Positions 1-32,619 of a stretch of 64,000 nt of DNA are shown here, one piece after another. The DNA lies in the NCBI RefSeq assembly GCF_006345805.1, contig NC_043002.1:70556001-70620000 (forward strand). Direction: 5' to 3'. The notes under the pieces are model-generated. The model did no database searches, had not been told where the DNA came from, and saw only the letters and a list, made by a program, of their open reading frames with translations. Numbering within the stretch: the first letter of the stretch is position 1; the number at the start of each line of letters is the position of its first letter. This stretch comes from Octopus sinensis (Eukaryota). Both the position numbers and the translations under genes were made by a program.

Positions 1-616
1 GTTACAAGTGTGGCCTGAGGGGTCACATAAGAGCCTTCTGCCCTCCCCCAGGGAAAGAAATGGATTCCGAACCAGAGAGAGAGAAGCAGAAACCAGAGGA
101 GAAGGAAACAGAAGAAGAGAATACACAGAAATGGAAGGAAGCTGGAAGTAAGAGGAAGAGAAGAATACGTGGAAAAGAAAATAATATGGAACTCCAATCC
201 ACCCCAAAACCACCCACGCCCTCTGAGTCCCACCCTATCCATGCAGACATTGAACCCACCCGCTCCCCCCCAACAAGAAAACAAAGAAAAAAAAGAATAC
301 ACACACACAAGAGATTGAAATCGATATCAGGCCGTACATTTGTACTATGACTGAACAGAAAGAAGTTAAAAGTCTAATGGAAGAGTATAAATGGTATGAT
401 GTTGGTGAGACTAGGTATGCTGTGATTGAAAAGAAGAACATAGGTGAGTTTATGGGGAGGTGTGAAAGGAAGAATTGGGAGGTGAAAGATATAAGAATGA
501 GCGATGAATTCGTGGAAAATATGGATGAGTATTTCGGAGTAAGAATGGATATGGAATTTATTCGTATTGGCAAAGAACATTCAAGTGACTATGAAAAACA
601 AAGGACAGGTAAGTGA
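1..616 (+). pseudogene. 3' part of Tx1-like ORF1 protein copy 1, frameshifted
   Basis: Near-identical to the C-terminal half of ORF 953-2368. One A is missing in the A-run near 281-296 (ACAAAG vs ACAAAAG), splitting it into ORFs 60-350 and 347-616. This could be a homopolymer sequencing error. Confidence 0.75.
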
Positions 617-952
617 TGCTGACGGACGGGGCCGTTGGTATCGCTTTCATTTTATCATTTTTTCGTTTAACAATTCATTTTCATAAAGTTTAATTATAAT
701 GTTCTATGTCCCCATGTCTTTTGGTGTCCCCTTCTGTGTCGCCCCTAGTGGGTAATAAAGAAATCAAAAACACGAACCATTTGGTCGGTTGTGTTTTTTT
801 ACGCTCGTAAAATTCGGTAAAAAAGAACAAAAAGCGTTGTTGTTGTTGTGGAAATTCTGAACGGCGTTGACGCGGTTTCGCGTTTCGCTCGTTCAGCGCG
901 TTAAACTTTTTTCTGTTTTGGCGGCCGTTTTCGGTCTGTCAGACAGAAGGAA

Positions 953-2368
953 ATGGACTATGAGTCTCTAACAGACTTGTCCACGACAGATGAGGAACTG
1001 GAACAGGCAATTGCAATGAAGCTGATGGAAGAAAAGCCTGGAGTTTTCGAGTCTTTATCAGACTTGTCTACGTCTGAGAGGGAGCTAGAAATGGCAGCAA
1101 GGAAATTGGAAGAGAAGCTGAGTTATACCTATGCCGGTGTAACCAAGAAGGCGGAAGAGAAAGGGGTCGACTTGGCCAAGCTACCAAGTTACCAGAAACA
1201 CATGAAAAAGGAAAGCGGTGAGGTGGAACTATCACCGACACCCAGGAGAAAAGAATGGTATGATAAGAGGACCATTGTTTACAGGGTGTTCGCAAACGAA
1301 AGGAAGAGGGTAGAAGTTGTAACCATGGAATGGATAGAGGAAGCCCTGCGAAGAACTGAGGAGGAAATAAATTTTCTGACTCGAGGATCCAAGTATGGGA
1401 CCGTAGTTGTGCACTTTAAAAGTGAATCTGCAGCGAGGAAGATGGCAGCGAAGGCGGTGAAGTCGGAAAAGGTAACACTGTTACCTACGTATTTAAACAG
1501 GAGGATTACACGAATAAGGGTGGAGGGAGTGCCACCAAACGTGGAGGCAGAATGGATTGTGGCGGCTGTGATCAGCGGCCACGAGGACGAAGTGGATATT
1601 CTCCATGCCTCGGTTAAGTCCGAGGGCTGGAGAGGCGTAACAGTGGAGCTGAACGTACAGGCAGAGACCGAGGTACTGGTGGACCTGACGGAAAGCATCA
1701 GACTGGGAGAAGTGATCATGAGAGTGTGGGTGGAGGGCAGGGCTCCACGTTGTTACAAGTGTGGCCTGAGGGGTCACATAAGAGCCTTCTGCCCTCCCCC
1801 AGGGAAAGAAATGGATCCCGAACCAGAGAGAGAGAAGCAGAAACCAGAGGAGAAGGAAACAGAGGAAGAGAATACACAGAAATGGAAGGAAGCTGGAAGT
1901 AAGAGGAAGAGAAGAATACGTGGAAAAGAAAATAATATGGAACTCCAATCCACCCCAAAACCACCCACGCCCTCTGAGTCCCACCCTATCCATGCAGACA
2001 TTGAACCCACCCGCTCCCCCCCAACAAGAAAACAAAAGAAAAAAAAGAATACACACACACAAGAGATTGAAATCGATATCAGGCCGTACATTTGTACTAT
2101 GACTGAACAGAAAGAAGTTAAAAGTCTAATGGAAGAGTATAAATGGTATGATGTTGGTGAGACTAGGTATGCTGTGATTGAAAAGAAGAACATAGGTGAC
2201 TTTATGGTGATGTGTGAATGCGAGAATTGGGAGGTGAAAGATATAAGAATGAGCGATGAATTCGTGGAAAATATGGATGAGTATTTCGGAGTAAGAATGG
2301 ATATGGAATTTGTTCGTATTGGCAAGGAACATTCAAGTGACTATGAAAAACAAAGGACAGGTAAGTGA
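953..2368 (+). CDS. Tx1/L1-clade ORF1p-like nucleic-acid-binding protein (471 aa; RRM-like core, CCHC knuckle CYKCGLRGHIRAFC)
   Basis: Intact ORF with a CX2CX4HX4C motif. It aligns by eye to ORF1 of the LINE at 26.8-27.3 kb (KRTIVYRVFAN vs KRTIIYKIINK; VHFKSESAARK...LLPTYLNRRITRIRVEGVP vs VVFHTEELAKR...LIPSYRGQKVTKITLNNVP; VWVEGR vs VVVDGR). Confidence 0.85.
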   Translation: MDYESLTDLSTTDEELEQAIAMKLMEEKPGVFESLSDLSTSERELEMAARKLEEKLSYTYAGVTKKAEEKGVDLAKLPSYQKHMKKESGEVELSPTPRRKEWYDKRTIVYRVFANERKRVEVVTMEWIEEALRRTEEEINFLTRGSKYGTVVVHFKSESAARKMAAKAVKSEKVTLLPTYLNRRITRIRVEGVPPNVEAEWIVAAVISGHEDEVDILHASVKSEGWRGVTVELNVQAETEVLVDLTESIRLGEVIMRVWVEGRAPRCYKCGLRGHIRAFCPPPGKEMDPEPEREKQKPEEKETEEENTQKWKEAGSKRKRRIRGKENNMELQSTPKPPTPSESHPIHADIEPTRSPPTRKQKKKKNTHTQEIEIDIRPYICTMTEQKEVKSLMEEYKWYDVGETRYAVIEKKNIGDFMVMCECENWEVKDIRMSDEFVENMDEYFGVRMDMEFVRIGKEHSSDYEKQRTGK

Positions 2369-2706
2369 TGCTGACGGACGGGGCCGTTGGTATCGCTTTC
2401 ATTTAATCATTTTTTCGTTTAACAATTCATGTTCATAAAGTTTAATTATAATGTTATATGTCCCCATGTTTCTTAGTGTCCCTTTCTGTGTCGCCCCTAG
2501 TGGGTAATAAAGAAATAAAAAAACACGAACCATTTGGTCGGTTGTGTTTTTTTCGGCTGCTGAAAATTCGGTAAAAAAGAAGAAAAAGCGTTGTTGTTGT
2601 TGTGGAAATTCTGAACGGCGTTGACGCGGTTTCGCGTTTCGCTCGTTCAGCGCGTTAAACTTTTTTCTGTTTTGGCGGCCGTTTTCGGTCTGTCAGACGG
2701 AAGGAA

Positions 2707-4128
2707 ATGGACTATGAGTCTCTAACAGACTTGTCCACGACAGATGAGGAACTGGAACAGGCAATTGCAATGAAGCTGATGGAAGAAAAGCCTGGAGTTT
2801 TCGAGTCTTTATCAGACTTGTCTACGTCTGAGAGGGAGCTAGAAATGACAGCAAGGAAATTGGAAGAGAAGCTGAGTTATACCTATGCCGGTGTAACCAA
2901 GAAGGCGGAAGAGAAAGGGGTCGAGTTGGCCAAGTTGCCAAGTTACCAGAAATACATGAAAAAGGAAAGCGGTGAGGTGGAACTATCACCGACACCCAGG
3001 AGAAAAGAATGGTATGATAAGAGGACCATTATTTACAGGGTGTTCGCAAACGAAAGGAAGAGGGTAGAAGTTGTAACCATGGAATGGATAGAGGAAGCCC
3101 TGCGAAGAACTGAGGAGGAAATTAATTTTCTGACTCGAGGATCCAAGTACGGAACCGTAGTGGTACATTTTAAAAGTGAATCTGCAGCGAGGAAGATGGC
3201 GGCGAAGGCGGTGAAGTCAGAAAAGGTAACACTGTTACCTACGTATTTAAACAGGAGGATTACACGAATAAGGGTGGAGGGAGTGCCACCAAACGTGGAG
3301 GCAGAATGGATTGTGGCGGCTGTGATCAGCGGCCACGAGGAGGAAGTAGATATTCTCCATGCCTCGGCTAAGTCCGAGGGCTGGAGAGGCGTAACAGTGG
3401 AGCTGAACGTACAGGCAGAGACCGAGGTACTGGTGGACCTGACGGAAAGCATCAGATTGGGAGACGTGATCATGAGAGTGTGGGTGGAGGGCAGGGCTCC
3501 ACGTTGTTACAAGTGTGGCCTGAGGGGTCACATAAGAGCCTTCTGCCCTCCCCCAGGGAAAGAAATGGATTCCGAACCAGAGAGAGAGAAGCAGAAACCA
3601 GAGGAGAAGGAGACAGTAGAAGAAGAAGAGAATACACAGAAATGGAAGGAAGCTGGAAATAAGAGGAAGAGAAGAATACGTGGAAAAGAAAATAATATGG
3701 AACACCAATCTACCCCAAAACCACCCACACCCTCTGAGTCCCACCCTATCCATGCAGACATTGAACCCACCCGCTCCCCCCCAACAAGAAAACAAAAGAA
3801 AAAAAAGAATACAAACACACAAGAGATTGAAATCGATATCAGGATGTACATTTGTACTATGACTGAACAGAAAGAAGTTAAAAGTCTAATGGAAGAGTAT
3901 AAATGGTATGATGTTGGTGAGACTAGGTATGCTGTGATTGAAAAGAAGAACATAGGTGAGTTTATGGTGAGGTGTGAAAGGGAGAATTGGGAGGTGAAAG
4001 ATATAAGAATGAGCGATGAATTCGTGGAAAATATGGATGAGTATTTCGGAGTAAGAATGGATATGGAATTTATTCGTATTGGCAAAGAACATTCAAGTGA
4101 CTATGAAAAACAAAGGACAGGTAAGTGA
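2707..4128 (+). CDS. Tx1/L1-clade ORF1p-like protein, copy 3 (473 aa)
   Basis: Intact paralog of 953-2368 with a few substitutions and a 2-aa insertion in the acidic linker. Confidence 0.85.
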   Translation: MDYESLTDLSTTDEELEQAIAMKLMEEKPGVFESLSDLSTSERELEMTARKLEEKLSYTYAGVTKKAEEKGVELAKLPSYQKYMKKESGEVELSPTPRRKEWYDKRTIIYRVFANERKRVEVVTMEWIEEALRRTEEEINFLTRGSKYGTVVVHFKSESAARKMAAKAVKSEKVTLLPTYLNRRITRIRVEGVPPNVEAEWIVAAVISGHEEEVDILHASAKSEGWRGVTVELNVQAETEVLVDLTESIRLGDVIMRVWVEGRAPRCYKCGLRGHIRAFCPPPGKEMDSEPEREKQKPEEKETVEEEENTQKWKEAGNKRKRRIRGKENNMEHQSTPKPPTPSESHPIHADIEPTRSPPTRKQKKKKNTNTQEIEIDIRMYICTMTEQKEVKSLMEEYKWYDVGETRYAVIEKKNIGEFMVRCERENWEVKDIRMSDEFVENMDEYFGVRMDMEFIRIGKEHSSDYEKQRTGK

Positions 4129-4561
4129 TGCTGACGGACGGGGCCGTTGGTATCGCTTTCATTTTATCATTTTTTCGTTTAACAATTCATTTTCATAAAT
4201 TTTAATTATAATGTTCTATGTCCCCATGTCTCTTGGTGTCCCCCTCTGTGTCGCCCCTAGTGGGTAATAAAGAATCAACAAACATGAACTATTATTGTTC
4301 TTAAATGTGACAGGAAAGGGGAGGCTGATTCGCTGGTGCAAATGTAATACATATAGTCGCGTTAGCAAAGAGATGAGTGTTTGACACCTACGCAGACAGG
4401 CAAGTCTTTTTTTCCGTGAGGGCTTTTATACTTCATTTATTAGACTATTTTCATGAGTCATTGCACGTTGATCACAATAAGATTTAAGTTTATATAAAAA
4501 TATCATTAATATTATTTACAGGAATGTAAACGGCGCCGTATAAAAAGAACCATTCGCACCG

Positions 4562-4606
<45 letters not shown>

Positions 4607-4607
<1 letters not shown>

Positions 4608-4780
4608 TATATTAAATTAGAGACAAAACCACTATTAGGCAAATCAAACAATGAAAGACTTAAGCCTTATTTTTTTAATAATTGCTACATATTTAAATAA
4701 TATAAATTAATTTATGTATTGGCTTAAGTCTTTCATTGTTTGATTTGCCTAATAGTGGTTTTGTCTCTAATTTAATATAA
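4607..4780. repeat. Foldback inverted repeat (60-bp perfect arms, 54-bp spacer) within (TA)n
   Basis: 4607-4666 is the reverse complement of 4721-4780. (TA)n tracts lie at ~4566-4606 and ~4847-4862. Confidence 0.9.
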
Positions 4781-4863
4781 TATAATATTGGATTCAATCC
4801 TAAATCTGATTTTTCCCTGTAAGTTTGGATTTATTCCCTAATATTTATTATATATATATATAT

Positions 4864-7215: not shown

Positions 7216-7847
7216 ACGAGACTTATACATTTAGTGAAACAACCAGTCATCAACAAATGATCGGTACTATACTGGTTCATAAAGGGCAGTTGTATGTATG
7301 ATAACTAGAGTCCTATTCCATCTCCCTGTTTAGAATCTATTTGTTTATTTTCTTTAACTGGGTTCAGTCCATTAAACGCTTTTGGACCAGGGTTCCAGTC
7401 CGAAGATAACGCAGCAAATTAATTCAATTTTCCATAGTGTATCAATGAAACACTTGTGATTTCCTCGTCTTCTTTTCACCCAGAAATCGTGGAAACAGAG
7501 TTACGAATGCTGCTCTTTTGTAAGGTACTAAGATAGAAAATATATTGAGAAGACGTATGGAGATAATCGTAAAATGAAACACTGAACTATAATCCTTTCA
7601 AGATATATATGTGTTAATGCATATATGGTTTCATATTCTCATTTGAACTTCTTAAGCCTAAGCCTCGAAATCTACCTTTTATTTTACTGTAAGAGACAAA
7701 ATATATTTCAATAGTGAACGCTTGTGTTTATATGCTAAATCCTACACCATCAAACAAAAGCACAGTATTCTGTTTATTTAATAGAAACCATTATAATATT
7801 CCATCGCATCATCAGGATATATCCACAGAATTAATTTACGGTGACGA

Positions 7848-8250
7848 TAAGGCGGCGAGCTGGCAGAAACGTTAGTACGCCAGGCAACATACGTATCCGT
7901 ATTTCGTCTGCCGTTACGTTCTGAGTTCAGATCCCGCCGATCTCGACTTTACCTTTTATCCTTTCGGGGTCGATTAAATAAGTACCAGTTACGCACTGGG
8001 GTCGATATAATCGACTTAATCCGTTTGTCTGTCCTTGTTTGGCGTCTCTGTGTTTAGCCCCTTGTGGGTAGCGAAGAAATAGGTATTTCGTCTGTCTTTA
8101 TGTTCTGAGTTCAAATTCCGTCGAGGTCGACTTTGCCGTTCATCCTTTTGGGGTCGATAGATTAAATGCCAGTTGCGCACTGAGATCGATCTAATCGGCT
8201 AGCCCCTTCCCCCAAAATTTCAGGCCTTGTGCCCGGAGTAGAAAAGAATT
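7848..8250 (+). mobile_element. Dimeric tRNA-derived SINE with two Deu/Nin-like domains (family B)
   Basis: Head TAAGGCGGCGAGCTGGCAGAAACG, two copies of GAGGTCGACTTT..CATCCTTTCGGGGTCGAT..AAGTACCAG, and an internal Tx1-like tail CCCCTTGTGGGTAG. Confidence 0.8.
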
Positions 8251-11200
8251 AATGGTAACGATGAGTCCCATATACGCTATGACGACGGACTAAATTTAAA
8301 GAATAATTTCGGTTTGTCCTTCTAGATTCTAATATGGAATCCTGAAATTGCTGAATTTGTCATCAACGCGGGGTCGACGAAATATGTACCAACCACACAC
8401 AAAGGCCCACTTAATCGATAATATTTCATCATGTGAAATAAACAGGCGGACGTTTGCTTCTATGCAAAGAGTTAAATTTTGAGAACGGAAGATTAATGGA
8501 AACAGTACAGCTACGATTTGGTGTCCTACCACAATAATTCGCTCTGAATTGAATTTACTTTTTGACCCTTAACTATTTTCCCCTACTTTGCATTATAAAA
8601 TGACTTTGTCTCATGGGGAAAGAATTCATTAAATATATTAACTTATTATATTAAACTCTGAACAATTGCTTTAAACAGTTTCTTCTATAAAGATCGATGT
8701 GAAATAGTTTTGTTGATATATTTGCAAACATTCAACCAAGCTATATTGATATCTCGGGTTTCATTAAGCAACTACATTTTCTCATTATTTATTTATTAAA
8801 AGAAAGCAAACAAAGAAATAAGACTTTTGCTATATTTAAGCTGTAATTAGGCAGACTAAATTTAGTTCTGTAATAATCACTTCTGAAACGACTCAAAAGA
8901 TATTACAACCAGCTATTTTAAACAATCACTGATGTTTGAATTCTTTTTCTTTCTCGATATGGTTTTATGTGTTTTTGTGGTAGGTATCCTTTCTTTTCTT
9001 TTATTAAGCTATTGTGTTTTTCCCCCCAACATTATCAGGTTAATAGATCTTCAAATGTGTCTCTGAACTGATAACGACTTCGATAATAGACAAACTATTT
9101 TCCCCATTGATATAAGATAATTTTAATCGGATAGATATTCTGAAATTCAAAGAACAGAAATGCTTCGTATTTCCTGTTTCAATACACGGCAAGATGTATT
9201 ACCAAGGAAATCTTGAAACATAAATAAAAGTAATAATTATCATAAAAATCACTTATTTATGGACAGGAAAATATGTTACACTTGTCTGTTTTAAATAATG
9301 GCTACATATATTACAGACAACATTTCTTAGTAATCAATTATACAGACAGATCGAAGAAAATCTATTTTCGTTCATTTTATCCCGAACTTTATCAATAGAA
9401 TTGTAGTGTTTAAAATATTTTGGCCTAATGTATTTTGAGTTTCAATGAAGAGTGTTTATGTCTTTTTAAGTCACCTGTTCGTGATATTCAAGTGAGAATT
9501 AGGTGCACAATTATATAACTGTTGGTTAAAATAGTTCCTTAGCTGATTTCTTCACATCGTTGTTATTTAGATATTAATAGGAATTCGGAAGTTAAACCAT
9601 CCTTTCATTGTTATTACTTTTTAATACTAACGTGTACTTTCGTACATGTATATTTCATAACAGTAAATCCATCTCCTCTCTTCTTTTCATGGAGATTAAC
9701 AAATAGGTTAAATATGAAACGAATGTTTATGACATTCGTAGTTGTATAAATCTGCAGGTCAGAGAAAATCTGGGCGAGAAAGGAATCCTTTGATTTCTTT
9801 TATGTACAACATTGCAGTGATCAAATAGATAAAGTGTGAACCTTCACCTCATGCCTCTAGAGATTACGTGTAGTTATTGTAGCCGCGGTGTATCTTTTCG
9901 TTAAAGCATTGAACAATTCATACTTCATCTTATCTTACCATAAATTATGTGTCAAAAGTGGACAACTCGTATACAGATGCAGAAATCTCTCGAAATAAAC
10001 GAGGTTTTCGATGGTTTATAGTTTTAATATCGTAACATGCCTATGTTATCACAGAATTTAATATGCCGGTAGAAATAGCTGTTGCCAGGTTATAAAATAT
10101 CTATAGAAACGCTTTATTAGGGGTGAGGGAACTTTTGATTTATGCATTTCAAGAAAAAAAAATCGCCCGCCTTATCATTCTTTCAATATTTTAATAGTTG
10201 CCGTTCATTCTCTTTGTTCGTCAGCCTGTTTTCATTGGATACATTTATTTGATAAACACTCTCTCTTAGACTTAAACATTATATACATCAGATTCTCTAC
10301 TTAGTTTATTTATATAACTGATGCGTCTTTTTGCCTGACGTCATTATCCTTTACATTTCCTTCGACTTTCTCATGTCTCATCACGTTACGATAGAGATTT
10401 AGATTTAATCGCATGCGATAAGATTTTATAGCACTTCTGACTTTATCTAACTCAAACCAAATACTACACAGTGATAACAAAACATTCAACCGAAAGCTAT
10501 AGTTATAATAAAGATGTGCCATTAATTCGGCTCTTCTTTTCGTCACCTCAACTTAATAATCTATGAAAAGACACGAGGGCTAATGGTTAGGCAACTGGGA
10601 TCTCGAATCCCTGACAGGAGGGTTCGTGCCCCTGTAGTCTATTCAGCTGACACAATGTATGTCAAGAGCGACATGGAAGGGTGTGAAATATTTTTAGAAA
10701 TATTTTTATGGTTAACAGCACATAAACCATACTTCATTTGAATTTTTTTGTGAATTTGATTGTTGCATATCAAATCATGCATTGATATAGTTCTGAACGT
10801 GTTTGGTGATGCCTGTAAAATAACAAAGTATAAAAGAAAGCATACATCCGGGGATTACTCTCATTTAGGAGTTAATTTAATAGAGAAAAATAAAGGAATA
10901 TAATCTGTTAGTTGTTAGCAGAAGAAATATGAAAGAGGCTACTCTTTTGAATCACAAATATGAGACTACTGAGTATTATCATTCTAGGGAAGCTATTATG
11001 GAAATGTAATTTTTATCCATAAGTATGAATTTTATAATTCTTACTTCACTGAAACTATTTGGCCATTTAATTAGAGGTACGCTAAAAGGCTGCGAACTGG
11101 TAGATTCATTAGAGCGGAGACAAATGCCTCACGGTATTTTTCTTGGTCCTTTAAATTTTGTGTTCGAATCGATCTTTGATTTTTATTTCTGTCGATCAAT

Positions 11201-15737: not shown

Positions 15738-16115
15738 CTTCCGCCAGTTACGACGACGAGGGTTCCAGTTGATCCGATCAATGTAACAGCCAGCTGCTCG
15801 TGAAATTAACGTGCAAGTGGCTGAGCACTCCACAGACACGTGTACCCTTAACGTAGTTCTCGGGGAGAATCAGCTTGACACAGAGTGTGAGAAGGTTGGC
15901 TCTTTGAAATGCAGGTACAACAGAAACGAGAAGAAAGAGTGAGAGAAAATTGTGGTGAAAAAGTATAGCAGGGTTCGCCACCACTCACTGCCGGAGCCTC
16001 GTGAAGCTTTAAGTGTTTTCATGCAATAAACACTAACAACGCCCGTTTTGGGAATCGAAACCGCTATGCTACGACCACGAGCCCGCTGCCTTAAACACTG
16101 GGCCATTGCGCCACC
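15738..16115 (-). mobile_element. SINE family A
   Basis: Colinear with 6501-6884. Confidence 0.85.
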
Positions 16116-16442
16116 ACAGTAATGTATATGTGTTAAATGTATGTATGTGTGTCTGTATGTGTGTGTATTATGTTTGACACCCATCACTATTAGTTAAATC
16201 ACGTCTTCGCAAATTAGGGATTCGGCAAAAGAGATCGATAGAATAAACAGCAGGCTTAAAAATGAGTATCGGAGTTGATATGTTTGATTACACATTTTAA
16301 AAACTAAAAAAAATATTCATGCATACCTAAATAAAGGGAAATGATTTCATCCATGAATAAAATTCTCATAGCAGCATCAACCTAAGAGAAAGCAGCTGTA
16401 TGATAGGTTGACTGAAAGAGCCGTCATATTTCTTTTACGTTA

Positions 16443-17245
16443 AGCGGCGAGTTGGCAGAAACGTTAGCACGGCGGGTGAAATACTTAGCGGTATTTCGTT
16501 TGCCTCTACGTTCTGAGTTCAAATTCCGCCGAGGTCAACTTTGCCTTTCATCCTTTCGGGGTCGATTAAATAAGTACCAGTTACGGACTGGGGTCGATAT
16601 AATCGACTTAATCCGTTTGTCTGTCCTTGTTTGTCCTCTCTGTGTTTAGCCCCTTGTGGGTAGTAAAGAAATAGGTATTTCGTCTGTCTTTACGTTCTGA
16701 GTTCAAATTCCGTCGAGGTGGACTTTACCTTTCGGGATCGATAAATTAAGTACCAGTTACGTACTGGGATTAATCTAATCGAATGGCCCCGTTCCCTCAA
16801 AATGTCAGGCCTTGTGCCTAGTAGAAAAGAATAATTGTAGCTTGAAAGGCGGGGATCTGGCAGAAACGTTAGCATGCCGGGCGAAATGCTTAGCGGTATT
16901 TCGTCTGCCGTTACGTTCTGAGTTCAAATTCCGCCGAGGTGGACTTTGCCTTTCATCCTTTCGGGGTCGATTAAATAAGTAGCAGTTACGCACTGGAATC
17001 GATATAATCGACTTAATTCGTTTGTCTGTCCTTGTTTGTCCTTTCTGTGTTTAGCCCCTTGTGGGTAGTAAAGAAATAGGTATTTCGTCTCTCTTTGCGT
17101 TGTGAGTTCAAATTCCGGCGCAGTCGACTTTGCCTTCAATCCTTTCTGGGTTGATAAATTAAGTACCAGCTGCATGCTACGCTCGATCTAATCGACTGGC
17201 CCCCTCCCTCAAAATTTCAGACCTTGTGTCTAGAGTAGAAAAGAG
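16443..17245 (+). mobile_element. Two tandem family-B SINE dimers within one 16-bp TSD
   Basis: Copies at ~16443-16836 and ~16846-17245. TATTTCTTTTACGTTA occurs at 16427-16442 and 17246-17261. Confidence 0.85.
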
Positions 17246-17800
17246 TATTTCTTTTACGTTACACGTAGACTACTCCAAAAGGTCGTCGCAGACAGCGTAA
17301 TGAAATACTTGATGTGTATGTCTGAAAAAAAGACGGAGCATCGGAATAAACCGGAAACATAGATCTATTACTGTTTTGTTCTAAATTCAAATACCACTCA
17401 AACCAATTTACTCTAATTTCTTCTAGGTTCAATGAAATACGTTCTGTTTGGTGTTCGTTATTGCAACAGTCGAATATTAACAAATTTATGATCAAACCTA
17501 CCGTCTTGTTTACTAACACCATATCATTTGAGAGAGAAATTTGTCTACTATTCCTAACTGATAAAGTGACCGAATAAATACTACCAGTGGAAGAGAGCGG
17601 GTGTAATATACTCACCCACTTCTATTTTAAAAATTATGTTCTGCAACATAGTTTGTGAGAATCCTATTGATCTGATAGTGAAGAACTAATACATTTGTAA
17701 CACGCACTGGAAAAGGCGTGGCGGCATTTCTCAGACATGTTCTTTATTATGGTCTGATTGCTAAGGATTGCTTATTCACACACACACACACACACATATA

Positions 17801-18090: not shown

Positions 18091-18323
18091 AAGGAGGCGA
18101 GCTGGCAGAAACGTTAGCATGCCGGGCGAAATGCTTAGCGGTATTTCGTCTGCCTCTACGTTCTGAGTTCAAATTCCACCGAGGTCGACTTTGCCTTTCA
18201 TCCTTTCGGGATCGATTAAATAAGTAGCAGTTACGCACTGGAATCGATATAATTGATTTAATCTGTATGTCAGTCCTTGTTTGTCTCCTCTGTGTGTTGT
18301 CCCTTGTGGGCAGTAAAGAAATA
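18091..18323 (+). mobile_element. Monomeric family-B SINE ending at the Tx1-like tail, 14-bp TSD
   Basis: AGTAAATGTCGAGT occurs at 18077-18090 and 18324-18337. Confidence 0.88.
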
Positions 18324-23435: not shown

Positions 23436-23810
23436 ACTGTTCTCAAATTTTGGCTCAAGTCAGCCATTTCATTGGCGGGTAAAGTGGATTATGTCGACCC
23501 CAGTTCCTAACTGACACTTATTTTATCGAACCCTAAGCGATGAAAGGCAAAGTAGACCTCGACGGAATTCCAACTCAGAGCGTAAAGACAGATGAAATAC
23601 ATATTTCTTTACTACCCACAAGGGGCTAAACTCACAGAGGACAAACAAGGACAGACAAACGGATTAAGTCTATTATATCAACCCCAGTGCGTAACTAGTA
23701 CTTAATTTATCGACCCCGAAAGGAATTTGAATTCAGAACGTAACGGCAGACGAAATACGGCTATGCAATTCGCCCGGCCTGCTAACGTTTCTGCCAGCTC
23801 GCCGCCTTAT
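23436..23810 (-). mobile_element. Family-B dimeric SINE with variant second tail, 11-bp TSD
   Basis: CATACGGAAAT occurs at 23425-23435 and 23811-23821. Confidence 0.82.
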
Positions 23811-26189: not shown

Positions 26190-28787
26190 ACATGGCAGTG
26201 AAAGCTGGAACCACTTGCGATAACAGCACTGTCACCACCACCACTAACAACAACAACGAGACTACTACTGCTACCACCACCGCCTCCACCACCACCACCA
26301 CCACCACCGCCACCTCATCCATTACCTCAACTACCAACAACAACAACAATAACAATGACAACAGGAATAACAACAATTGTGCCACCATTTCGACATCTGC
26401 TGCCACGGCTGTCTCTTCTGCCACTGACACCACCACCAACACCAACAACAAAAACAATAACAACAACAACAATTCCGTTCATACCTTGTTTTCTCCAACA
26501 ACAAGAACTGAAGGGAATAAACAAAAGACTGTGACCACCAAACAAATTGACAAAAGCTGCTCGAACACAGGGACAAACTATGCAAATAATTTTCCACCCC
26601 TTCCTACTTGCACAATCAAACCAAATACACCGATTTTACCAACTGCAGCCAACAGCAACATCACCACCAGCAACAACAATAACAAAACAACAACAAATTT
26701 CGCCGAGGCGATAAAAGAAAAAAAGACAACAGTATATTTTACTGCACAACAGATAAAAGATACGAAAATTTTAATAACGGAAGTAGATGGTATAGTAAAA
26801 ATAAACATACCACAAGAAATATTAGAAAATGAAAAAAAAAAGAACTATTATATATAAAATAATTAATAAGAAAACAAAAAGTCCAGAGAAGGCTAATACA
26901 AGCAAAATCGAAAAATGCTTGAAACCCATCTGGAACTACAAAGAGCATGTGACCTGGTGGAACAAGTTCGCACACATACAAGTGGTCTTCCACACTGAAG
27001 AGTTAGCAAAACGTTTCTCAACGCTAACTCTTCATTCAGATGAACTCACATTAATACCAAGCTATCGTGGACAGAAAGTGACTAAGATCACTTTAAACAA
27101 TGTCCCCAAAATAGCGAACAATCTATGGCTAGTAAAGGCCTTATGTGTGAAAATGGAAGATTTCACTATTTTAGAAACTACGGTCACGGAACACAAAAAC
27201 TGGATGGGAAAAAGAGTAGAATTTCTACTACACATAAACCAAGATGAGATAAAGAAAATACCCACCCAGATATGTGTATCAGAAGACCACAAGTTATATG
27301 TGGTCGTCGATGGCAGAAGATTGCAAATATGCCGCAAGAAAACAACAGCAACAACAACAGCAGCCGGAAAAAAACAAAATAGCCAGCTTTACTACCCACA
27401 CCACAATTTGTACAAACAGGACTAATCACAGAAAAAAAAAAAAAACCTCACCAACCAAACAACCACACCAACTGCATCAAGAACAGAAGCAACACCAGCA
27501 ACAACAACCAAGAATAAACCAACTCCCAAACCAAGGACATCTGCCAAAAAGACACTCATCGAAAATGAAGAAACAATTACTACTCCAAATCCCCACAAAA
27601 TTGACACCCCAAACAACACAACAATCATCATCATCATTGTTCGACCGTGGTCGAGACAATGGAATTTACCATGTTGCGCCAGACTTCACGGTCCATCATA
27701 GCATTACGGAGGTCCTGTTGCTGGATGCCTGTATCCCTGGAGATTACATCAGGGTAGGAGAGTGTGCGCCCTCTGGTGTTGCGAGTAGATGGCTTCCAGA
27801 GGAGAAGAGTAGAAATTACTTCTTTTTCAGCTCTACAACAATGTCCAGCAAACTGGACTCTCCTACCTTTCACAAGAGATGACACAGGTGGTAATTTCCC
27901 ATATAGTTGCATTTTAGTTGGATGGCGCCTCCACGAGAGATTTTGAGCTCTCATAAGGAGGCGAGTGTAGGTTCCATCCAACCGCCTCTCAAGCTTCTTT
28001 GATAACGTCCAGGTTTCTGAGCCATATAGTAGGATTGGTTCGACTGTGGCTTTGAATATTTCAAGTTTGAAGTCTCTACTTAGATTTGATAACCAGATCT
28101 TATGCATGTCATTACAGGCTGACCAGGCCATACCCTTTCTAGTTAGAAAGTCTTTTCCAGATGATGACAATACCTACAATCACTCAAACATAAAATACCC
28201 ACACCCCACCTCCAAAACCCCATACACCACAATCTAACGCTCACCAACCAACACCAACAACAAAATCAACACAGTCTACAATAGACCCCAATATTTTCCC
28301 CCTCCAAAGCTCTGATTCCTCTGATTTGTCATTAGACGAAGAAGACACAGAAGATTGGCAAATAGCCACAGGGGGGAGAAGAAAAAAGGGAAAAAGAAAA
28401 GAAAAGATAACAAACAAAGCAGGAAGATTCACCACTCCCGAAACAAAAACATGCACAGAAAACAAACACATCAACACAAACACACCATCATCAAACCCCC
28501 CAACAATGTTGACAGCCATAAACACAAACAACCACGACCTAATGGAACACATTAGGTCAAACACCAACATAACTGAAAACGACATAAAAACAAATAACCA
28601 CCCACGCACAACACCACCACAACACATTAAGATAATACACGTAACACAGAATACATACAGCACCCTGAAATCTCTTTACCCTGATGCAGTAGGGAGATTT
28701 CAAAAATATTCACCAAAGAAACTATATAAAAACCTCATGGAAGAAGACTGTGAGGTGAAAAACAAAGGACTTTCGGACAACAAGTAA
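26190..28787 (+). pseudogene. Tx1 ORF1 (disrupted): Thr/Asn-rich N-terminus, RRM-like core, eroded zinc knuckle, interrupted by RTE
   Basis: ORF pieces 25988-26857, 26829-27425 and 28326-28787. There is a frameshift in the A-run near 26831-26840. Homologous to the tandem-array ORF. Confidence 0.72.
27624..28169 (-). mobile_element. 5'-truncated RTE-clade LINE 3' end nested in Tx1 ORF1
   Basis: Open frame 27634-28170 reads KATVEPILLYGSETWTL...RRVQFAGHC...DREVWR, typical of the RTE C-terminus, with a (TGA)n tail. Confidence 0.88.
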
Positions 28788-28853
28788 CCTTTTCTCTCGA
28801 TCTTTCCTTTTTGCATTTTCTTTTCGTGTGTAAAACACAATTTTTATCGGAAC

Positions 28854-31800
28854 ATGCTCAGAATAGGCAGTATAAATGTACGTGGCTTGGGGTCGCCTTG
28901 GAAACAAAGGATACCTGTTAAATGACATCAAGTCACTAAATCTGAATATCATAGCCATCAGTGAGACCAGACTCTACAGCTCGCGGGCACTCCAGCACAT
29001 GTTCGGTACACATTTCAACATTTATTTTTCTCCGTGTCTACCGAGAATGGGCGGAGATGGCACCGCGGTGCTTCTCCGAAAGAGTCTGGATCTCAAAGTA
29101 AGAGCAATTTTCCTAGACCCGGAGGGTAGGTCGGTCGTTTTGGATGTCGATGGCAGCAATGAGTGTGCTTTTCGACTGATAACAGTTTATGCTCCGTCCT
29201 TAACAGACCGACCAGATTTCTTTCGACGTCTAGAGTCTTTCATGGGAACGTCTCGTCCTTTACTTTTAGTGGGGGATTGGAATGCCACCCTGGACACGCA
29301 TCTAGACTACGTGGGCAGAGATAGCAATAAAAGGGGATGCAAATGCCTCAAAGACCTGCTCAGACGTTTCCAACTGTCTGACAGGTACCGACTAGACCAC
29401 CCGAATGTGCCAATGTGGACATGGAGTAACCGCATCGGGTCGTCCAGATCATACTTAGATAGAGTATTCTGTAGGACAATAGATAAAAATAGTGTAGGTT
29501 GTCCACAATTTCATATAATCAGTTACACAGATCACAAGTTTGTGACTTGTACACTTGACTTAGATAAGACACATAGGCAGGGTCCTGGTTACTGGAAACT
29601 GAACGCGGCTTTTACAGCACGACAGGTTTACAGGGACCGTATCAGCACATTAGTTAAGAGAGCTTTGACGGGTACCATCATTAACAACAGATGGTGGTAT
29701 GCCCTAAAAAAAGCAATTAAAGCAGAATCAGTCAGATACAGTAAAGCCCTAGCATTAGACCGAAATAGAATAGAGGGAGAATTAGTTAAGGTTTTAGAAG
29801 AGGCACTTAGAACTGGCATCGCGTCCAACGTGCTGGCGGCGAGATTGGCCCTCGACCAACACCTCAACGCCAAACACGAGGGATGCGTTGTCAGAGCTAG
29901 GATGCGTGCTCTGAGGAACGAAGGAGTTGGAGCCGCCCAAGAGGCCCTAGTGGTGGAGACGCAACGAGGCAACAGAGCCACCATCAAGTTTCTTATAGAT
30001 GAACAGGGGCGCAAATTACTCGAGCCTAAAAGGATGTGTGGGGCTTTTCAACAACACTTCACCCAACTGTTTGGGACAAGTGGTGGGTCAGAACGCAGAG
30101 TGGACTTTAGTGCCTACCTGCATGCCTTGCCACGACTCTCAGCAAGAGAGGTGGAGTCTTGTGAAAGGCCTATCACAGCTGCGGACGTACAGGATGCGAT
30201 GGAGGGCTGCGCGAGAGACAAGCCACCAGGCTTGGATGGTCTGCCCTACGAACTTTATTGTCATATGCCAGACTTGTTTGGAGGCGTCTTGGCAGCTGTT
30301 TACTGCAACTGGCAGCAAAACGGGAGTATTCCTGCTTTTGTAAAGCGGGGAGCAGTGGCACTGATTAAGAAAGACCCAAACAAGGGGGACGTCATAGATA
30401 ATTTCAGGCCCATCACTCTGCTCAACGCAGATTTGAAAATTTTGGCCAAGGTGTTAGCCGAGAGATTGGCGCTTGTCATCAAGAAACTAATCGACAAGGC
30501 GCAAACATGCGTCGTGCCGGGTAGTAGTATTCATGACAACCTCCATCTGATGCGCTACATCATAGACAGGGTAGTTAAGAATCCTGACATGAGTGGGGCG
30601 CTGATCAATTTGGATCAATCAAAAGCTTTCGATAGGGTAGACCATCACTACTTGGAGGCTGTCCTTAAAGCGGCTGGTTTCGGTCCAGTTTTCTGCGGTT
30701 GAATCGCTGCCTTATACAGCGGCATCCGCTCAGTATTTCGCGTAAATGGTCATCTATCCAGACCTTTTAACATCATGCGTTCGGTTCGTCAGGGATGCCC
30801 CCTCTCATCGCTGCTGTATGTATTGACTCTTGAGCCACTACTACGGAATCTGGCGACGCTGAGGGGCATCCCACGAGAGCTGGGATGCGGGAGGAGCGTG
30901 TCTGCATACGCGGATGATGTCACCGTCATAGTGTAGAGCTAACAGCACATCGAGCTGGTCGGCGAGACACTAAAAGAACACGAAGCGGTAACGGGAGCAA
31001 AAATTAACCGGGAAAAGTCAGTGGGCTTGCGTCTCCATCGTGGGACGCTGGACGGACGGACCGGTTAAATAGCTCGGGGTCTGGTTCGGTCCGGACCTCC
31101 AAATGGAGAAGAACTGGGGCGAGATAACGACTAGGGTGGCTACTCTCACCCAGAAATGGGCTGAGAGAAAGCTATTCCTAAAAGGTCGGGCGGAGGTGGC
31201 GAACGCGTACATCGCATCCGTCATCGAGTATCGTCTGACTGTCGTGCCTTGTCCCGACCCTACCATCACCAAACTGGAACGTATACTCTTCCGCTTCCTG
31301 TGGAAGGGAAACGTTCCGATGGTTAGGCGATCCATTTGCTGTCAACACCCGCTAAATGGAGGGCTGGGCATCCCGTGGTTGATGATGCGCAGACATGCGC
31401 TGAGACCGCGACATCTCCGGCGCTTCATAAACGACGGTGATCAGGTGTGGTCGCCTTTTGTGCGGCGCGCTTTCCCGCAGCTCGTCTCCATGGACGAACT
31501 ACAGTCATGGATCAAGCAGAGACCGAGGCTAGGCGAATGGCACCGCGAGTGTCGCGTTGCTCTCAAGCAACTCTGCCGTCCGGGATCGAACTTGTGCGAC
31601 TCCATCACAACAAAGGCATTCTATAGAGGATTAGTGGAGGGGAGGTGCGACGACGAACTCGGGCAGAGTCTGGGCGTCGACGAGGAACACCTGACCCGCG
31701 TGTTCAGGACAACTTTCGGGCCGGGACCTATGAACAATCACCAAAGATCCCTGGCCTGGCAGTGCTATCGAGAAGCATTACCTGTTCGGGATAAGCTCTA

Positions 31801-32251
31801 CAGACACGGTTCCAGACACACTGGACCGACTTGCCCGAGATGCGGTCAGAGCGACGAAACCGTTCTGCACGCACTCGTGCAATGTCCAACCATTTCAGAC
31901 CTGTGGGCTTATGCCGAACGGCTGCTGTAACGTGTGGGACGAATCCGCCTATCGGCCGAGTCTGTCGTGAGGATTGCTCCGCCCCCTTCCCTCAACCGGG
32001 AAGGCAAGGCAGTTTTCATCGTACTGGTGGCCATGGTGAAAGAATGTGTGTGGTGGACCCGAGCGAAAGGACTAGAGACAAACACTTACCTCTCTGGCCA
32101 ATCGCTCATCAACTTTTTCAAGTACCACTTGAAAAGGAAGGTGAGAATGGAGAGGGAAGTTTTGTCTCGCGAAAGATTAAAAAAAAGATGGGTGAATGTT
32201 GCAAAGATGGTGCGTGCGAGTGACGAAACCATTTTGAGCATGACCCTGTAA
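28854..32251 (+). pseudogene. Tx1 ORF2: APE endonuclease, reverse transcriptase and C-terminal CCHC (disrupted)
   Basis: MLRIGSINVRGL start (frameshift ~28905), ISETRL, GDWNA, SDHK-like YTDHK, FRPITLLNADLK, LDQSKAFDRV, RQGCPLS, YADD and CPRCGQSDETVLHALVQC. Stops occur at ~30700, ~30935 and ~31928. Confidence 0.92.
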
Positions 32252-32552
32252 ATCGTAAAAAAGAAAGAGAGAGAGCATTTTGCTCTCATGTGGTTATTTC
32301 CTCCCTGACTGAGGTTCCCGTGGTCTTTTCTGTAGGCTTTTCTTCCCATGGATGAACCCCATCTTGTTTTATCAATGTTTTTAATCAATGTTTCTGTGAT
32401 ACACGATTTCTTTCCTTTTTTTCTTTTTTTCCTCTCGATCCCTTTTGATCGCAATCTTACATTTATTTCCTTTTTTCTACCCTCGAAAAGAAAAGCTCTA
32501 CATTTGTATTTGTCCCCTCTGTATTCAGCCCTGTGTGGCTAATAAAAGAAAG

Positions 32553-32619
<67 letters not shown>

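What the first reader, a model, noticed from the sequence alone, without database searches (positions are those of the whole stretch)
1..4293. Tandem array of an ORF1-only Tx1-derived retroelement with intact reading frames
Seen: at least three head-to-tail ~1.75-kb units, each built like a complete retro-transcript (leader, single ORF, 3' UTR, AATAAA plus A-rich end), with no APE/RT. Both complete ORFs are intact while every other element in the window is decayed. The protein is homologous to ORF1 of the Tx1 LINE at 26-29 kb, and the 3' end matches that LINE's 3' end. Known: Tx1-clade elements are often target-specific and can stack in tandem. Inference: this is either a non-autonomous family that supplies its own ORF1p chaperone and borrows ORF2p in trans, or a domesticated/amplified ORF1p gene family (possibly a dominant-negative LINE restriction factor).
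Basis: partly seen in the sequence, partly recalled or inferred. Interest (0 to 1): 0.85.

Follow-up and report, generated by a model that had tools for sequence, protein, structure and literature searches.

The report
Octopus ORF1-only half-LINE tandem array
The window starts inside a head-to-tail array of an octopus retrotransposon that keeps only the RNA-binding ORF1 protein of an L1-type LINE and apparently borrows the copying enzyme from related full LINEs; this is an invertebrate counterpart of mammalian HAL1 and fly HeT-A, not a new kind of element.

Summary
Window 1-4289 holds 2.44 head-to-tail units of about 1.75 kb, 97% identical. Each has a 5' UTR, one ORF (471 and 473 aa, both intact), a 3' UTR with AATAAA, and no endonuclease or RT. 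The ORF encodes a Type-I LINE ORF1p: two RRM-like domains, a CCHC knuckle, a disordered linker and an orphan 89-aa C-terminal module. The host is an Octopus. The same family forms arrays on several O. vulgaris chromosomes, and it also occurs as 5'-truncated and solo copies in O. vulgaris and O. sinensis. Its last ~45 nt match the 3' ends of autonomous L1-type LINEs and of a tRNA-headed SINE. The two complete window ORFs differ with dN/dS 0.27. They belong to different subfamilies, each with relatives at other loci, so the array grew by repeated insertion and not only by local duplication. Best reading: a non-autonomous ORF1-only "half-LINE" mobilised in trans, functionally like HAL1 and HeT-A. 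A domesticated gene family and a neutral satellite are both disfavoured. The Tx1 clade label is untested; only L1-superfamily membership of the neighbouring LINE is shown. Call it a new member of a known kind, of moderate interest.

The parts
1..777 (+). Partial unit 1, cut by the window edge. It holds the 3' 44% of a unit: from the CCHC knuckle through the linker, the C-terminal module, the 3' UTR, AATAAA (754-759) and the spacer TCAAAAACACGAAC (764-777). A 1-bp deletion in the A-run near 285-300 splits the frame; the module survives as an 89-aa ORF at 347-616.
778..2530 (+). Complete unit 2. 5' UTR at 778-952 (starts CATTTGGTCGG and has a CpG-rich stretch). ORF at 953-2368. 3' UTR at 2369-2515 with AATAAA at 2506-2511. 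Spacer TAAAAAAACACGAAC at 2516-2530. It belongs to the subfamily without the 6-bp insertion, shared with the O. vulgaris arrays L001 and L003.
2531..4289 (+). Complete unit 3. ORF at 2707-4128. AATAAA at 4266-4271. Spacer TCAACAAACATGAAC at 4275-4289, then unrelated flank from 4290. It belongs to the subfamily with the 6-bp insertion (AGTAGA), shared with O. sinensis L005 and O. vulgaris L002.
953..2368 (+). ORF of unit 2, 471 aa. It is an ORF1p with two RRM-like domains (about nt 1202-1732), the CCHC knuckle CYKCGLRGHIRAFC (1751-1792), a K/E/P-rich disordered linker, and an 89-aa C-terminal module with its own ATG (2099-2365).
2707..4128 (+). ORF of unit 3, 473 aa, with the same architecture: RRM-like domains at about 2956-3486, CCHC at 3505-3546, C-terminal module at 3859-4125.
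2361..2368 (+). Consensus 5' splice-site sequence CAG|GTAAGTGA that contains the ORF stop codon. The same sequence lies at 4121-4128 and 611-618. Many O. vulgaris gene models use it as a donor.
4235..4274 (+). Conserved 3' terminal block GGTGTCCCCCTCTGTGTCGCCCCTAGTGGGTAATAAAGAA. It also lies at 723-763 and 2475-2515. It is shared with autonomous LINE 3' ends and with a SINE, and is the presumed recognition site for a partner ORF2p.
26841..32552 (+). Decayed L1-superfamily LINE in the same window. ORF1 remnants lie at 26841-27320. ORF2 has APE and RT at 28876-31062 and zf-RVT at 31103-31930. The 3' end GTCCCCTCTGTATTCAGCCCTGTGTGGCTAATAAAAGAAAG is followed by (TATC)n. It is a distant relative that carries the same 3' block.
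16446..16675 (+). SINE copy with a tRNA-like head, ending in the same 3' block (...GCCCCTTGTGGGTAGTAAAGAAATAG). Further copies lie at 16851-17080, 23803-23600 (minus strand) and 20190-20172 (minus strand).

Best explanation
The array is built from a non-autonomous 'half-LINE' of an Octopus genome. Each 1.75-kb unit is a complete retrotransposon RNA copy that kept the 5' UTR, the ORF1 and the 3' UTR of an L1-superfamily LINE and has no ORF2.

Inferred life cycle:
1. The unit is transcribed and its ORF1p (tandem RRM + CCHC) coats the RNA.
2. The conserved ~45-nt 3' terminal block, shared with autonomous LINEs and a SINE of the same genome, is recognised by the ORF2p of a partner LINE.
3. That ORF2p carries out target-primed reverse transcription.

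Arrays arise because new copies, and other LINEs with the same tail, are repeatedly inserted directly behind the 3' end of a resident copy. Each insertion re-creates the same short locus-specific spacer, which is probably a regenerated target-site duplication. Block duplication by unequal exchange adds further units in some arrays.

Shown here: the anatomy, the homology, the ORF1-only state of the whole family, dispersal, 5' truncation, the shared 3' block, coding constraint, and mixed subfamilies within one array.

Inferred: trans-mobilisation by ORF2p, the role of the 3' block, and the regenerated-target mechanism.
For: Anatomy and repeat structure.

ORF1p identity:
- 27-36% identity to the ORF1 of three full LINEs, E 1e-29 to 1e-45.
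- 372 remote homologues, all over aa ~55-330.
- AF2 core with pLDDT above 90 for aa 70-290, and Foldseek top hits to tandem-RRM proteins.
- A CCHC knuckle.

The family is ORF1-only everywhere. There are 26 full-length units in the window, L001, L002, L003, L005 and L006, and none has APE or RT.

Dispersal: arrays or copies lie on O. vulgaris chromosomes OX597821, OX597827, OX597839, OX597833 and OX597817, and on O. sinensis CM016866. Module-bearing gene models lie on further chromosomes.

5'-truncated units follow complete 3' ends:
- L003 3142-3424.
- L002 about 7830-8320 and 8335-8660.
- L005 10883-11026.
- L001 units that lack 17 nt at the 5' end.

The 3' block is shared with autonomous LINEa, the window LINE and the SINE. 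The motif occurs 7 times in the window against 0.03 expected by chance.

Mixed head-to-tail chains occur, such as LINEa followed by a unit, or a unit followed by LINEb.

Coding constraint between the two neighbouring window ORFs:
- 17 synonymous against 18 non-synonymous changes, dN/dS 0.27, P = 2e-4. P is 0.016 under a conservative neutral expectation.
- The 3' UTR differs by 8.1% and dS is 6.1%, against dN of 1.6%.
- Changes private to unit 3 are 13 synonymous and 9 non-synonymous.

The neighbouring units belong to different subfamilies. In 34 of the 57 columns where they differ, both states occur at other loci. O. sinensis L005 shares the unit-3 state at 42 columns and the unit-2 state at 13.

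Principle: SINEs and LINEs that share a 3' tail share the retroposition machinery (PMC3747384).
Against: - No autonomous LINE with a closely related ORF1 (above 50% identity) was found in the loci I could read, so the direct parent or partner is unidentified.
- Only 6 of 26 full-length units have the fused 471-473-aa ORF. Most O. vulgaris units are frameshifted, chiefly in two homopolymers, which may be decay or assembly error.
- Clear target-site duplications at solo insertions were not demonstrated.
- L001 contains an almost perfect 3-unit higher-order duplication. L001, L003 and L006 share downstream sequence, so some arrays or units arose by DNA-level duplication.
- The 3' block has no covariation-supported structure.
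- Expression and mobility are untested.
Confidence: 0.7

Rival explanations
1. A domesticated or amplified host gene family derived from LINE ORF1, for example an RNA-binding factor or a dominant-negative LINE restriction factor, maintained in tandem copies by selection on the host.
For: Both complete ORFs in the window are intact and differ with dN/dS 0.27. The start codon has a good Kozak context and a 5' UTR that could hold a promoter. ORF1-derived host gene families exist, such as the EKA family (PMC4641428).
Against: The units keep complete retroelement termini and the LINE/SINE 3' block. The family lies at many unrelated loci with different flanks. It includes 5'-truncated copies. Only 6 of 26 units have the full ORF. 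Neighbouring units come from different dispersed subfamilies. Constraint of this size is also expected for an active element whose propagation needs its own ORF1p.
Confidence: 0.1
2. A satellite-like tandem repeat: a dead, ORF2-deleted LINE fragment amplified only by unequal crossing-over or segmental duplication. The ORFs would be intact merely because the copies are young.
For: L001 shows a 3-unit higher-order repeat: u2 equals u5, u3 differs from u6 by 0.1%, and u4 from u7 by 0.3%. L001, L003 and L006 share flanking sequence or a diverged terminal unit. Junction spacers are homogeneous within each array. Many units are frameshifted.
Against: The window units are 3% apart overall and 6-8% apart at silent and 3'-UTR sites. 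They nevertheless have no stop or frameshift and show dN/dS 0.27. They carry subfamily-diagnostic states shared with other loci and another species. 5'-truncated units begin exactly after complete 3' ends. Solo or near-solo copies exist. Heterologous LINEs with the same tail are joined head-to-tail in the same chains.
Confidence: 0.12
3. Arrays are seeded in one step. One route is retrotransposition of read-through transcripts that span several units. The other is RT template-jumping from the 5' end of one RNA to the 3' end of another. Either would replace repeated insertion at one site.
For: O. sinensis L005 is a 144-bp 3' fragment, a junction and a full unit, with the same 20-nt spacer after both. 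That is the structure expected from a 5'-truncated copy of a two-unit transcript. Junctions are precise, 3' end to 5' end.
Against: Units of different subfamilies sit side by side with the same locus-specific spacer in the window. The same subfamilies carry different spacers at other loci. That pattern fits a target-derived spacer better than a transcribed one. 5'-truncated units occur in the interior of chains.
Confidence: 0.08

Closest known systems
HAL1 ('half-L1') of mammals: a non-autonomous L1 derivative that encodes only ORF1p (PMC5753468, citing Smit 1999 and Bao & Jurka 2010)
   Same: An L1-superfamily derivative that keeps the 5' UTR, ORF1 and 3' end and has lost ORF2. It is presumed to be mobilised by the ORF2p of autonomous relatives. 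It is a multi-copy family with coding constraint on ORF1.
   Different: The ORF1p here is Type I (tandem RRM + CCHC + orphan C-terminal module), not the Transposase_22 coiled-coil type. The host is a cephalopod. There is no poly(A) tail; instead a specific 3' block is shared with LINEs and a SINE (stringent-type tail). It forms head-to-tail arrays, whereas HAL1 is dispersed.
HeT-A of Drosophila telomeres (PMC5537684)
   Same: A Gag/ORF1-only non-LTR element with no RT of its own. It lies in head-to-tail, same-orientation arrays mixed with autonomous relatives. Its gag is under negative selection.
   Different: HeT-A belongs to the Jockey group and is strictly telomeric. The O. vulgaris arrays lie 24-93 Mb inside chromosomes of 73-177 Mb. 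No telomere function is indicated here.
Zepp LINE clusters of Chlorella/Coccomyxa (PMC3446292)
   Same: An L1-group LINE that accumulates in clusters by inserting into or next to earlier copies, giving internal chromosome clusters of 5'-truncated and full elements.
   Different: Zepp is autonomous and its clusters are nested, one per chromosome. Here the main component is ORF1-only and the units are cleanly head-to-tail.
SINE/LINE pairs with a common 3' tail, i.e. stringent 3'-end recognition such as eel UnaSINE/UnaL2 (PMC3747384)
   Same: A non-autonomous element carries the last tens of nucleotides of a partner LINE. In this window the same block ends a tRNA-headed SINE, the ORF1-only unit and the LINEs.
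   Different: The non-autonomous partner here is protein-coding and 1.75 kb long.
ORF1-derived host genes: the EKA effector family of powdery mildew (PMC4641428), and mammalian L1TD1 (the latter from my own knowledge)
   Same: Protein families descended from LINE ORF1 that exist without ORF2.
   Different: Those have lost their retroelement termini and mobility hallmarks. The octopus units retain them.

Membership tests
ORF1-only non-autonomous LINE derivative (half-LINE, HAL1-type in the functional sense) | Encodes a protein homologous to LINE ORF1p | tested here: met
   tblastn/blastp against the ORF1 of four LINEs gives 25-36% identity, E 1e-11 to 1e-45. The AF2 model shows tandem RRM-like domains plus CCHC.
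ORF1-only non-autonomous LINE derivative (half-LINE, HAL1-type in the functional sense) | No endonuclease or RT in any family member, not just at one deleted locus | tested here: met
   26 full-length units at 6 loci all run ORF, then a ~160-nt 3' UTR, then the next unit. No ORF2 tblastn hits fall inside any unit.
ORF1-only non-autonomous LINE derivative (half-LINE, HAL1-type in the functional sense) | 3' end shared with an autonomous LINE of the same genome | tested here: met
   A ~45-nt terminal block aligns with LINEa (L002), the window LINE and a SINE. The motif is enriched, 7 occurrences against 0.03 expected.
ORF1-only non-autonomous LINE derivative (half-LINE, HAL1-type in the functional sense) | Retrotransposition hallmarks: 5'-truncated copies, dispersed loci, target-site duplications | tested here: inconclusive
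   5' truncation and dispersal are shown. Unambiguous TSDs at a solo insertion are not shown. The locus-specific spacers are compatible with regenerated TSDs.
ORF1-only non-autonomous LINE derivative (half-LINE, HAL1-type in the functional sense) | Mobilisation in trans by a partner ORF2p | not testable with these tools
   This needs a retrotransposition assay or insertion-polymorphism data.
HAL1 sensu stricto (mammalian L1-derived) | Type II ORF1p (Transposase_22 coiled-coil/RRM/CTD) and a poly(A) tail | tested here: not met
   Pfam finds no Transposase_22, only a weak zf-CCHC hit. The fold is tandem RRM. There is no poly(A). The element is therefore analogous to HAL1, not a member.
L1 superfamily (the neighbouring LINE, and the source lineage of the ORF1) | ORF2 with APE, RT and a C-terminal zf-RVT, collinear with L1 ORF2p | tested here: met
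   Pfam finds Exo_endo_phos, RVT_1 and zf-RVT. phmmer against human L1 ORF2p gives E 1e-33 over residues 18-602, against 1e-7 for R2.
Tx1 clade | RT phylogeny places the element inside Tx1 and not in another L1 group | not tested
   No reference Tx1 or L1 sequences were available. The homologue search returned unnamed proteins.
Tx1 clade | Sequence-specific target (multicopy RNA gene, microsatellite or a defined repeat) | tested here: inconclusive
   The flanks of the window, L001/L003, L002 and L005 insertions differ. The window has no Rfam or tRNA hit. However, insertions lie consistently right after the 3' ends of related elements.
HeT-A-type telomeric retrotransposon | Arrays located at chromosome ends | tested here: not met
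   The O. vulgaris arrays lie at 32.3 of 118.9 Mb, 37.7 of 84.7 Mb, 24.8 of 73.6 Mb, and 80.1 and 93.3 of 176.7 Mb. The chromosomal position of the window is unknown.
Domesticated ORF1-derived host gene | Fixed locus without retroelement termini, with copies uniformly intact | tested here: not met
   There are many loci, the termini are retained, and only 6 of 26 units have the full ORF.
Satellite DNA (neutral tandem repeat) | Units evolve without coding constraint and are related mainly by local duplication | tested here: not met
   dN/dS is 0.27 between neighbours. Neighbours belong to different dispersed subfamilies. Local block duplication does occur in L001.

The most novel reading that the evidence does not exclude
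The ORF1p, through its orphan 89-aa C-terminal module, might direct its own RNP, and those of LINEs with the same tail, to the 3' ends of resident copies. This would be a HeT-A-Gag-like homing function that builds internal 'retrotransposon trains'. Alternatively, the host might use the arrays and their ORF1p as a decoy or restriction system against the autonomous LINEs. The consistent head-to-tail joining of heterologous elements and the coding constraint are compatible with either reading. Neither reading is demonstrated.
Probability: 0.1. Interest if true: 0.7.

Novelty: new member of a known kind. Interest (0 to 1): 0.45.

Why it matters
ORF1-only LINE derivatives are well documented only in mammals (HAL1) and in fly telomeres (HeT-A).

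A cephalopod example from the L1 superfamily, with a Type-I ORF1p, would show that 'keep the chaperone, borrow the enzyme' is a recurrent strategy.

It also offers a natural system in which a coding half-LINE, a SINE and several autonomous LINEs share one 3' tail. That allows tests of cis-preference, tail recognition and the way head-to-tail arrays form.

For octopus genome annotation there is a practical warning. The 89-aa terminal module, with its own ATG and a consensus splice donor, is incorporated into many predicted gene models, and these are probably TE-driven chimeras.

Tried and rejected
- **Pfam on the ORF.** Only sub-threshold hits (zf-CCHC, DUF4833, Ephrin). The Ephrin and Complex1_LYR hits on the C-terminal module are treated as noise.
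- **PDB sequence search with the ORF.** Nothing significant.
- **AF2 of the C-terminal module alone.** Mean pLDDT was 48.6, too poor for a fold search. BLASTP of the module against the C-termini of ORF1a and ORF1b found no similarity, so the module remains an orphan.
- **RNA structure of the 3' block.** Only a 4-bp hairpin with no covariation. I make no structural claim.
- **Exact look-ups of the three window ORFs in the assembly index.** Not on record. I could not extend the array upstream of the window or name the species.
- **Homologue search with the window ORF2.** It was meant to obtain clade names and returned unnamed proteins.
- **Rfam and tRNA scans of the window.** Run to find a multicopy RNA-gene target; no hits.
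- **Telomeric (HeT-A-like) location.** Rejected for the O. vulgaris arrays on their coordinates.
- **The window LINE at 26-32 kb as parent.** Rejected, since ORF1 identity is only 25-28%.
- **Technical limits.** Loci L002, L004, L007 and L008 were not readable by scripts. L002 was analysed through the sequence tools only. L004, L007 and L008 were not analysed beyond their gene tables.

Full report
**1. What is in the window**

Window 1-4289 is a head-to-tail array. Direct repeats recur every 1751-1760 bp. A unit taken from 2525-4290 matches 772-2530 at 96.6% over 1766 bp and 1-777 at 97.1% over 785 bp.

Reading the sequence and the junctions gives these boundaries:
- partial unit 1 at 1-777;
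- unit 2 at 778-2530;
- unit 3 at 2531-4289;
- unrelated sequence from 4290.

Each complete unit has five parts:
- a ~175-nt leader beginning CATTTGGTCGG, with a CpG-rich stretch;
- one ORF (953-2368, 471 aa; 2707-4128, 473 aa);
- a ~150-nt 3' UTR;
- AATAAAGAAA;
- a 14-15-nt spacer (TCAAAAACACGAAC, TAAAAAAACACGAAC or TCAACAAACATGAAC).

There is no poly(A). No endonuclease or RT similarity lies inside the array.

The partial first unit has a 1-bp deletion in an A-run. This puts the last 89 codons in another frame.

**2. The protein**

Pfam gives only a sub-threshold CCHC knuckle.

An exhaustive HMMER search found 372 homologues (E up to 0.001). The remote ones all align to residues ~55-330. Residues 385-473 match only close (61% or more) relatives; those I looked up are all Octopus proteins.

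AlphaFold2 with a 59-sequence alignment gives pLDDT above 90 for residues ~70-290. It gives a disordered linker at 290-380 and a moderately confident small alpha/beta module at 380-447. Foldseek against the PDB returns tandem-RRM proteins first, including U2AF65 RRM1-2, hnRNP A1 UP1 and HuC (E 1e-5 to 1e-3, probability 1.0).

Two RRM-like domains followed by CYKCGLRGHIRAFC is the 'Type I' ORF1p architecture in the Khazina-Weichenrieder scheme. That type is reported for plant L1s and for non-mammalian L1/Tx1 elements (PMC5203782).

Direct comparison confirms the homology:
- 25-28% identity to the ORF1 remnant of the window LINE at 26841-27320 (E ~1e-11);
- 27-36% identity to the ORF1 of three full LINEs in an O. 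vulgaris locus (E 1e-29 to 1e-45).

The C-terminal 89-aa module shows no detectable similarity to the C-termini of those ORF1 proteins. It folded poorly on its own. It remains an orphan.

**3. Organism and family**

All close hits are Octopus vulgaris proteins. More distant ORF1 relatives come from O. sinensis and O. bimaculoides.

Fetching the encoding loci showed that the family is neither a single locus nor a single deletion:
- L001 (OX597821.1, 32.3 Mb) has 9 units plus a diverged (75%) ORF1-only unit.
- L003 (OX597827.1, 37.7 Mb) has at least 9 units and a 283-bp 5'-truncated one.
- L006 (OX597833.1, 24.8 Mb) has 5 units plus the diverged unit.
- L007 and L008 (OX597817.1) show the same ~1.7-kb periodicity of 89-aa gene calls.
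- L002 (OX597839.1) has one full and several truncated units chained with full LINEs.
- O. sinensis L005 (CM016866.1) has a 144-bp 3' fragment plus one full unit.

The flanks of the window array match none of these loci. None of the 26 full-length units carries an ORF2.

The arrays lie deep inside chromosomes, so they are not telomeric.

**4. Link to autonomous LINEs**

The last ~45 nt of the unit are GTGTCCCCCTCTGTGTCGCCCCTAGTGGGTAATAAAGAAAT. They align with three other kinds of 3' end:
- a full-length autonomous LINE in L002 (GTCCCATCTGTGTTCGCCCCTTGTGGGTAATAATAAAACAAC);
- the decayed LINE in this window (…GTCCCCTCTGTATTCAGCCCTGTGTGGCTAATAAAAGAAAG, ending at 32552);
- a SINE with a tRNA-like head, present several times in the window (…GCCCCTTGTGGGTAGTAAAGAAATAG).

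The 19-nt core occurs 7 times in the window against 0.03 expected.

The window LINE has APE, RT and zf-RVT domains. Among solved structures it is most similar to human L1 ORF2p (E 1e-33, collinear over 585 residues, against 1e-7 for R2). It is therefore L1 superfamily. Whether it belongs to the Tx1 clade could not be tested.

A common 3' tail is the classical signature of elements that use the same LINE machinery (PMC3747384). That the tail is the ORF2p recognition site here is an inference. I found only a 4-bp hairpin without covariation.

**5. Selection**

The two complete window ORFs differ at 35 sites, 17 synonymous and 18 non-synonymous. This gives dS 0.061, dN 0.016 and dN/dS 0.27. The excess of synonymous changes has P = 2e-4, or 0.016 if the neutral synonymous fraction is raised to 0.30. 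Transitions and transversions are nearly equal, 30 to 24.

The 3' UTRs differ by 8.1%. The only indel in the ORFs is a 6-bp in-frame one. Changes private to unit 3 are 13 synonymous and 9 non-synonymous.

The divergence between these neighbours therefore accumulated under protein-coding constraint.

Family-wide, omega is about 0.4-0.5. Counts for the C-terminal module are too small to judge.

In the O. vulgaris loci only 4 of 22 full-length units have the fused ORF. About ten have a 372-384-aa ORF plus a separate 89-aa ORF. The cause is 1-bp changes in a C-run and an A-run just upstream of the module's ATG. I cannot tell real mutations from homopolymer assembly errors.

**6. How the arrays form**

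Four observations argue against simple in-situ duplication as the main process.

(a) Units 2 and 3 of the window belong to different subfamilies. Of the 57 alignment columns where they differ, both states occur at other loci in 34. The O. sinensis copy shares the unit-3 state at 42 columns and the unit-2 state at 13. The L001 and L003 units share the unit-2 state about 35 to 21. A 6-bp insertion and the 5'-end variants follow the same split.

(b) Units from arrays on different chromosomes interleave in a distance tree.

(c) 5'-truncated units start exactly after the complete 3' end of the preceding unit.

(d) Other LINEs with the same tail are joined in the same head-to-tail way. Examples are truncated LINEa followed by full LINEa followed by a unit, and a unit followed by LINEb. 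The L001 and L003 arrays abut a LINEa-like 5' UTR.

In every array the short sequence between AATAAAGAAA and the next 5' end is locus-specific, and it recurs at the distal end of the array. The same subfamilies carry different spacers at different loci. The spacer is therefore best read as target-derived, that is, a target-site duplication regenerated by each new insertion at the same nick site. This is an inference.

One-step seeding, by read-through transcripts or by template jumping, is a possible contributor (L005). DNA-level block duplication clearly also occurs: in L001, u2 equals u5, u3 is nearly identical to u6, and u4 to u7.

**7. Comparison with known systems**

Functionally the element is a 'half-LINE', like mammalian HAL1, which encodes only ORF1p (PMC5753468). 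It also resembles Drosophila HeT-A, which has Gag but no RT, forms head-to-tail arrays with autonomous relatives, and has gag under negative selection (PMC5537684).

It is not a member of either family. Its ORF1p is Type I rather than Transposase_22, it has no poly(A), it is not from the Jockey group, and it is not telomeric.

Its clustering habit recalls the Zepp clusters of green algae (PMC3446292). Its tail-sharing recalls stringent SINE/LINE pairs (PMC3747384).

ORF1-derived host genes such as the EKA family (PMC4641428) differ in having lost their retroelement termini.

**8. Verdict**

The domestication reading is unlikely (about 0.1), and so is a purely neutral satellite (about 0.12).

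The finding is a new member, in a cephalopod and with a Type-I ORF1p, of the known class of ORF1-only non-autonomous LINE derivatives. Its array-forming habit is unusual and worth a proper genome-wide study.

Interest is moderate.

No step had to be referred.

Noticed in passing
window 2361-2368, 4121-4128, 611-618; proteins P0001-P0016: The ORF stop codon lies inside a consensus 5' splice site (CAG|GTAAGTGA). At least 12 O. vulgaris gene models use the 89-aa terminal module as an exon ending exactly at ...EKQRT and spliced to unrelated downstream sequence. One model appends it as the last exon of a large ASH/MSP-domain gene (P0003). P0001 and P0002 splice module to module across three array units. 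These are probably TE-driven chimeric models or transcripts.
   Followed up: partly
window ORF nt ~1070 and ~1093 (e.g. window 2022-2050; 285-300 in the partial unit); L001, L003, L006: Frameshifts in the family cluster in a C7-8 run and an A-run just upstream of the module's own ATG. Many copies therefore encode a 372-384-aa RRM/CCHC protein plus a separate 89-aa ORF. This could be a real two-ORF form, decay, or homopolymer assembly error.
   Followed up: partly
L001 20839-22512; L006 ~16115-17259: A second, 75%-identical ORF1-only family sits at the distal end of two arrays. Its 5' half is saturated at synonymous sites relative to the array family (dS above 2), whereas the linker, module and 3' UTR have dS of 0.2-0.45. 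This implies a mosaic origin: the 3' module was exchanged between ORF1 lineages.
   Followed up: partly
window 16446-17200, 23480-23803 (minus strand), 7854-8200 (minus strand), 18096-18327 (minus strand): A composite SINE: a full monomer with a tRNA-like head, ending in the LINE-type 3' block, followed head-to-tail by a 5'-truncated second monomer. It is repeated at least five times in the window. ARAGORN and Rfam do not call the head as a tRNA.
   Followed up: partly
window 4603-4784: A perfect 64-nt inverted repeat (100% complementary, 54-nt loop) lies 300 bp downstream of the array, next to an (AT)n tract. It looks like a foldback or MITE.
   Followed up: no
window 27634-28170 (minus strand): An intact 178-aa ORF encoding the C-terminal part of a different LINE's RT region is nested in antisense inside the decayed L1-type LINE, between its ORF1 remnants and its ORF2.
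   Followed up: no
window 32553-32620: The decayed LINE ends directly in a (TATC)n and then an (AT)n microsatellite. This may be its tail repeat or its target.
   Followed up: no
L002 10554-12848: A different LINE family (ORF1b, 493 aa, intact) is followed after ~400 bp only by the last ~135 codons of an ORF2. It may be another ORF2-deleted half-LINE, or two elements joined head-to-tail.
   Followed up: no
L001 22486-23010 and L003 15629-16130: The distal flanks of two arrays on different chromosomes are 90% identical over ~520 bp and look like a slightly 5'-truncated LINEa-type 5' UTR and ORF1. Some arrays may therefore be paralogous copies of a larger composite, or may share a preferred target.
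   Followed up: partly
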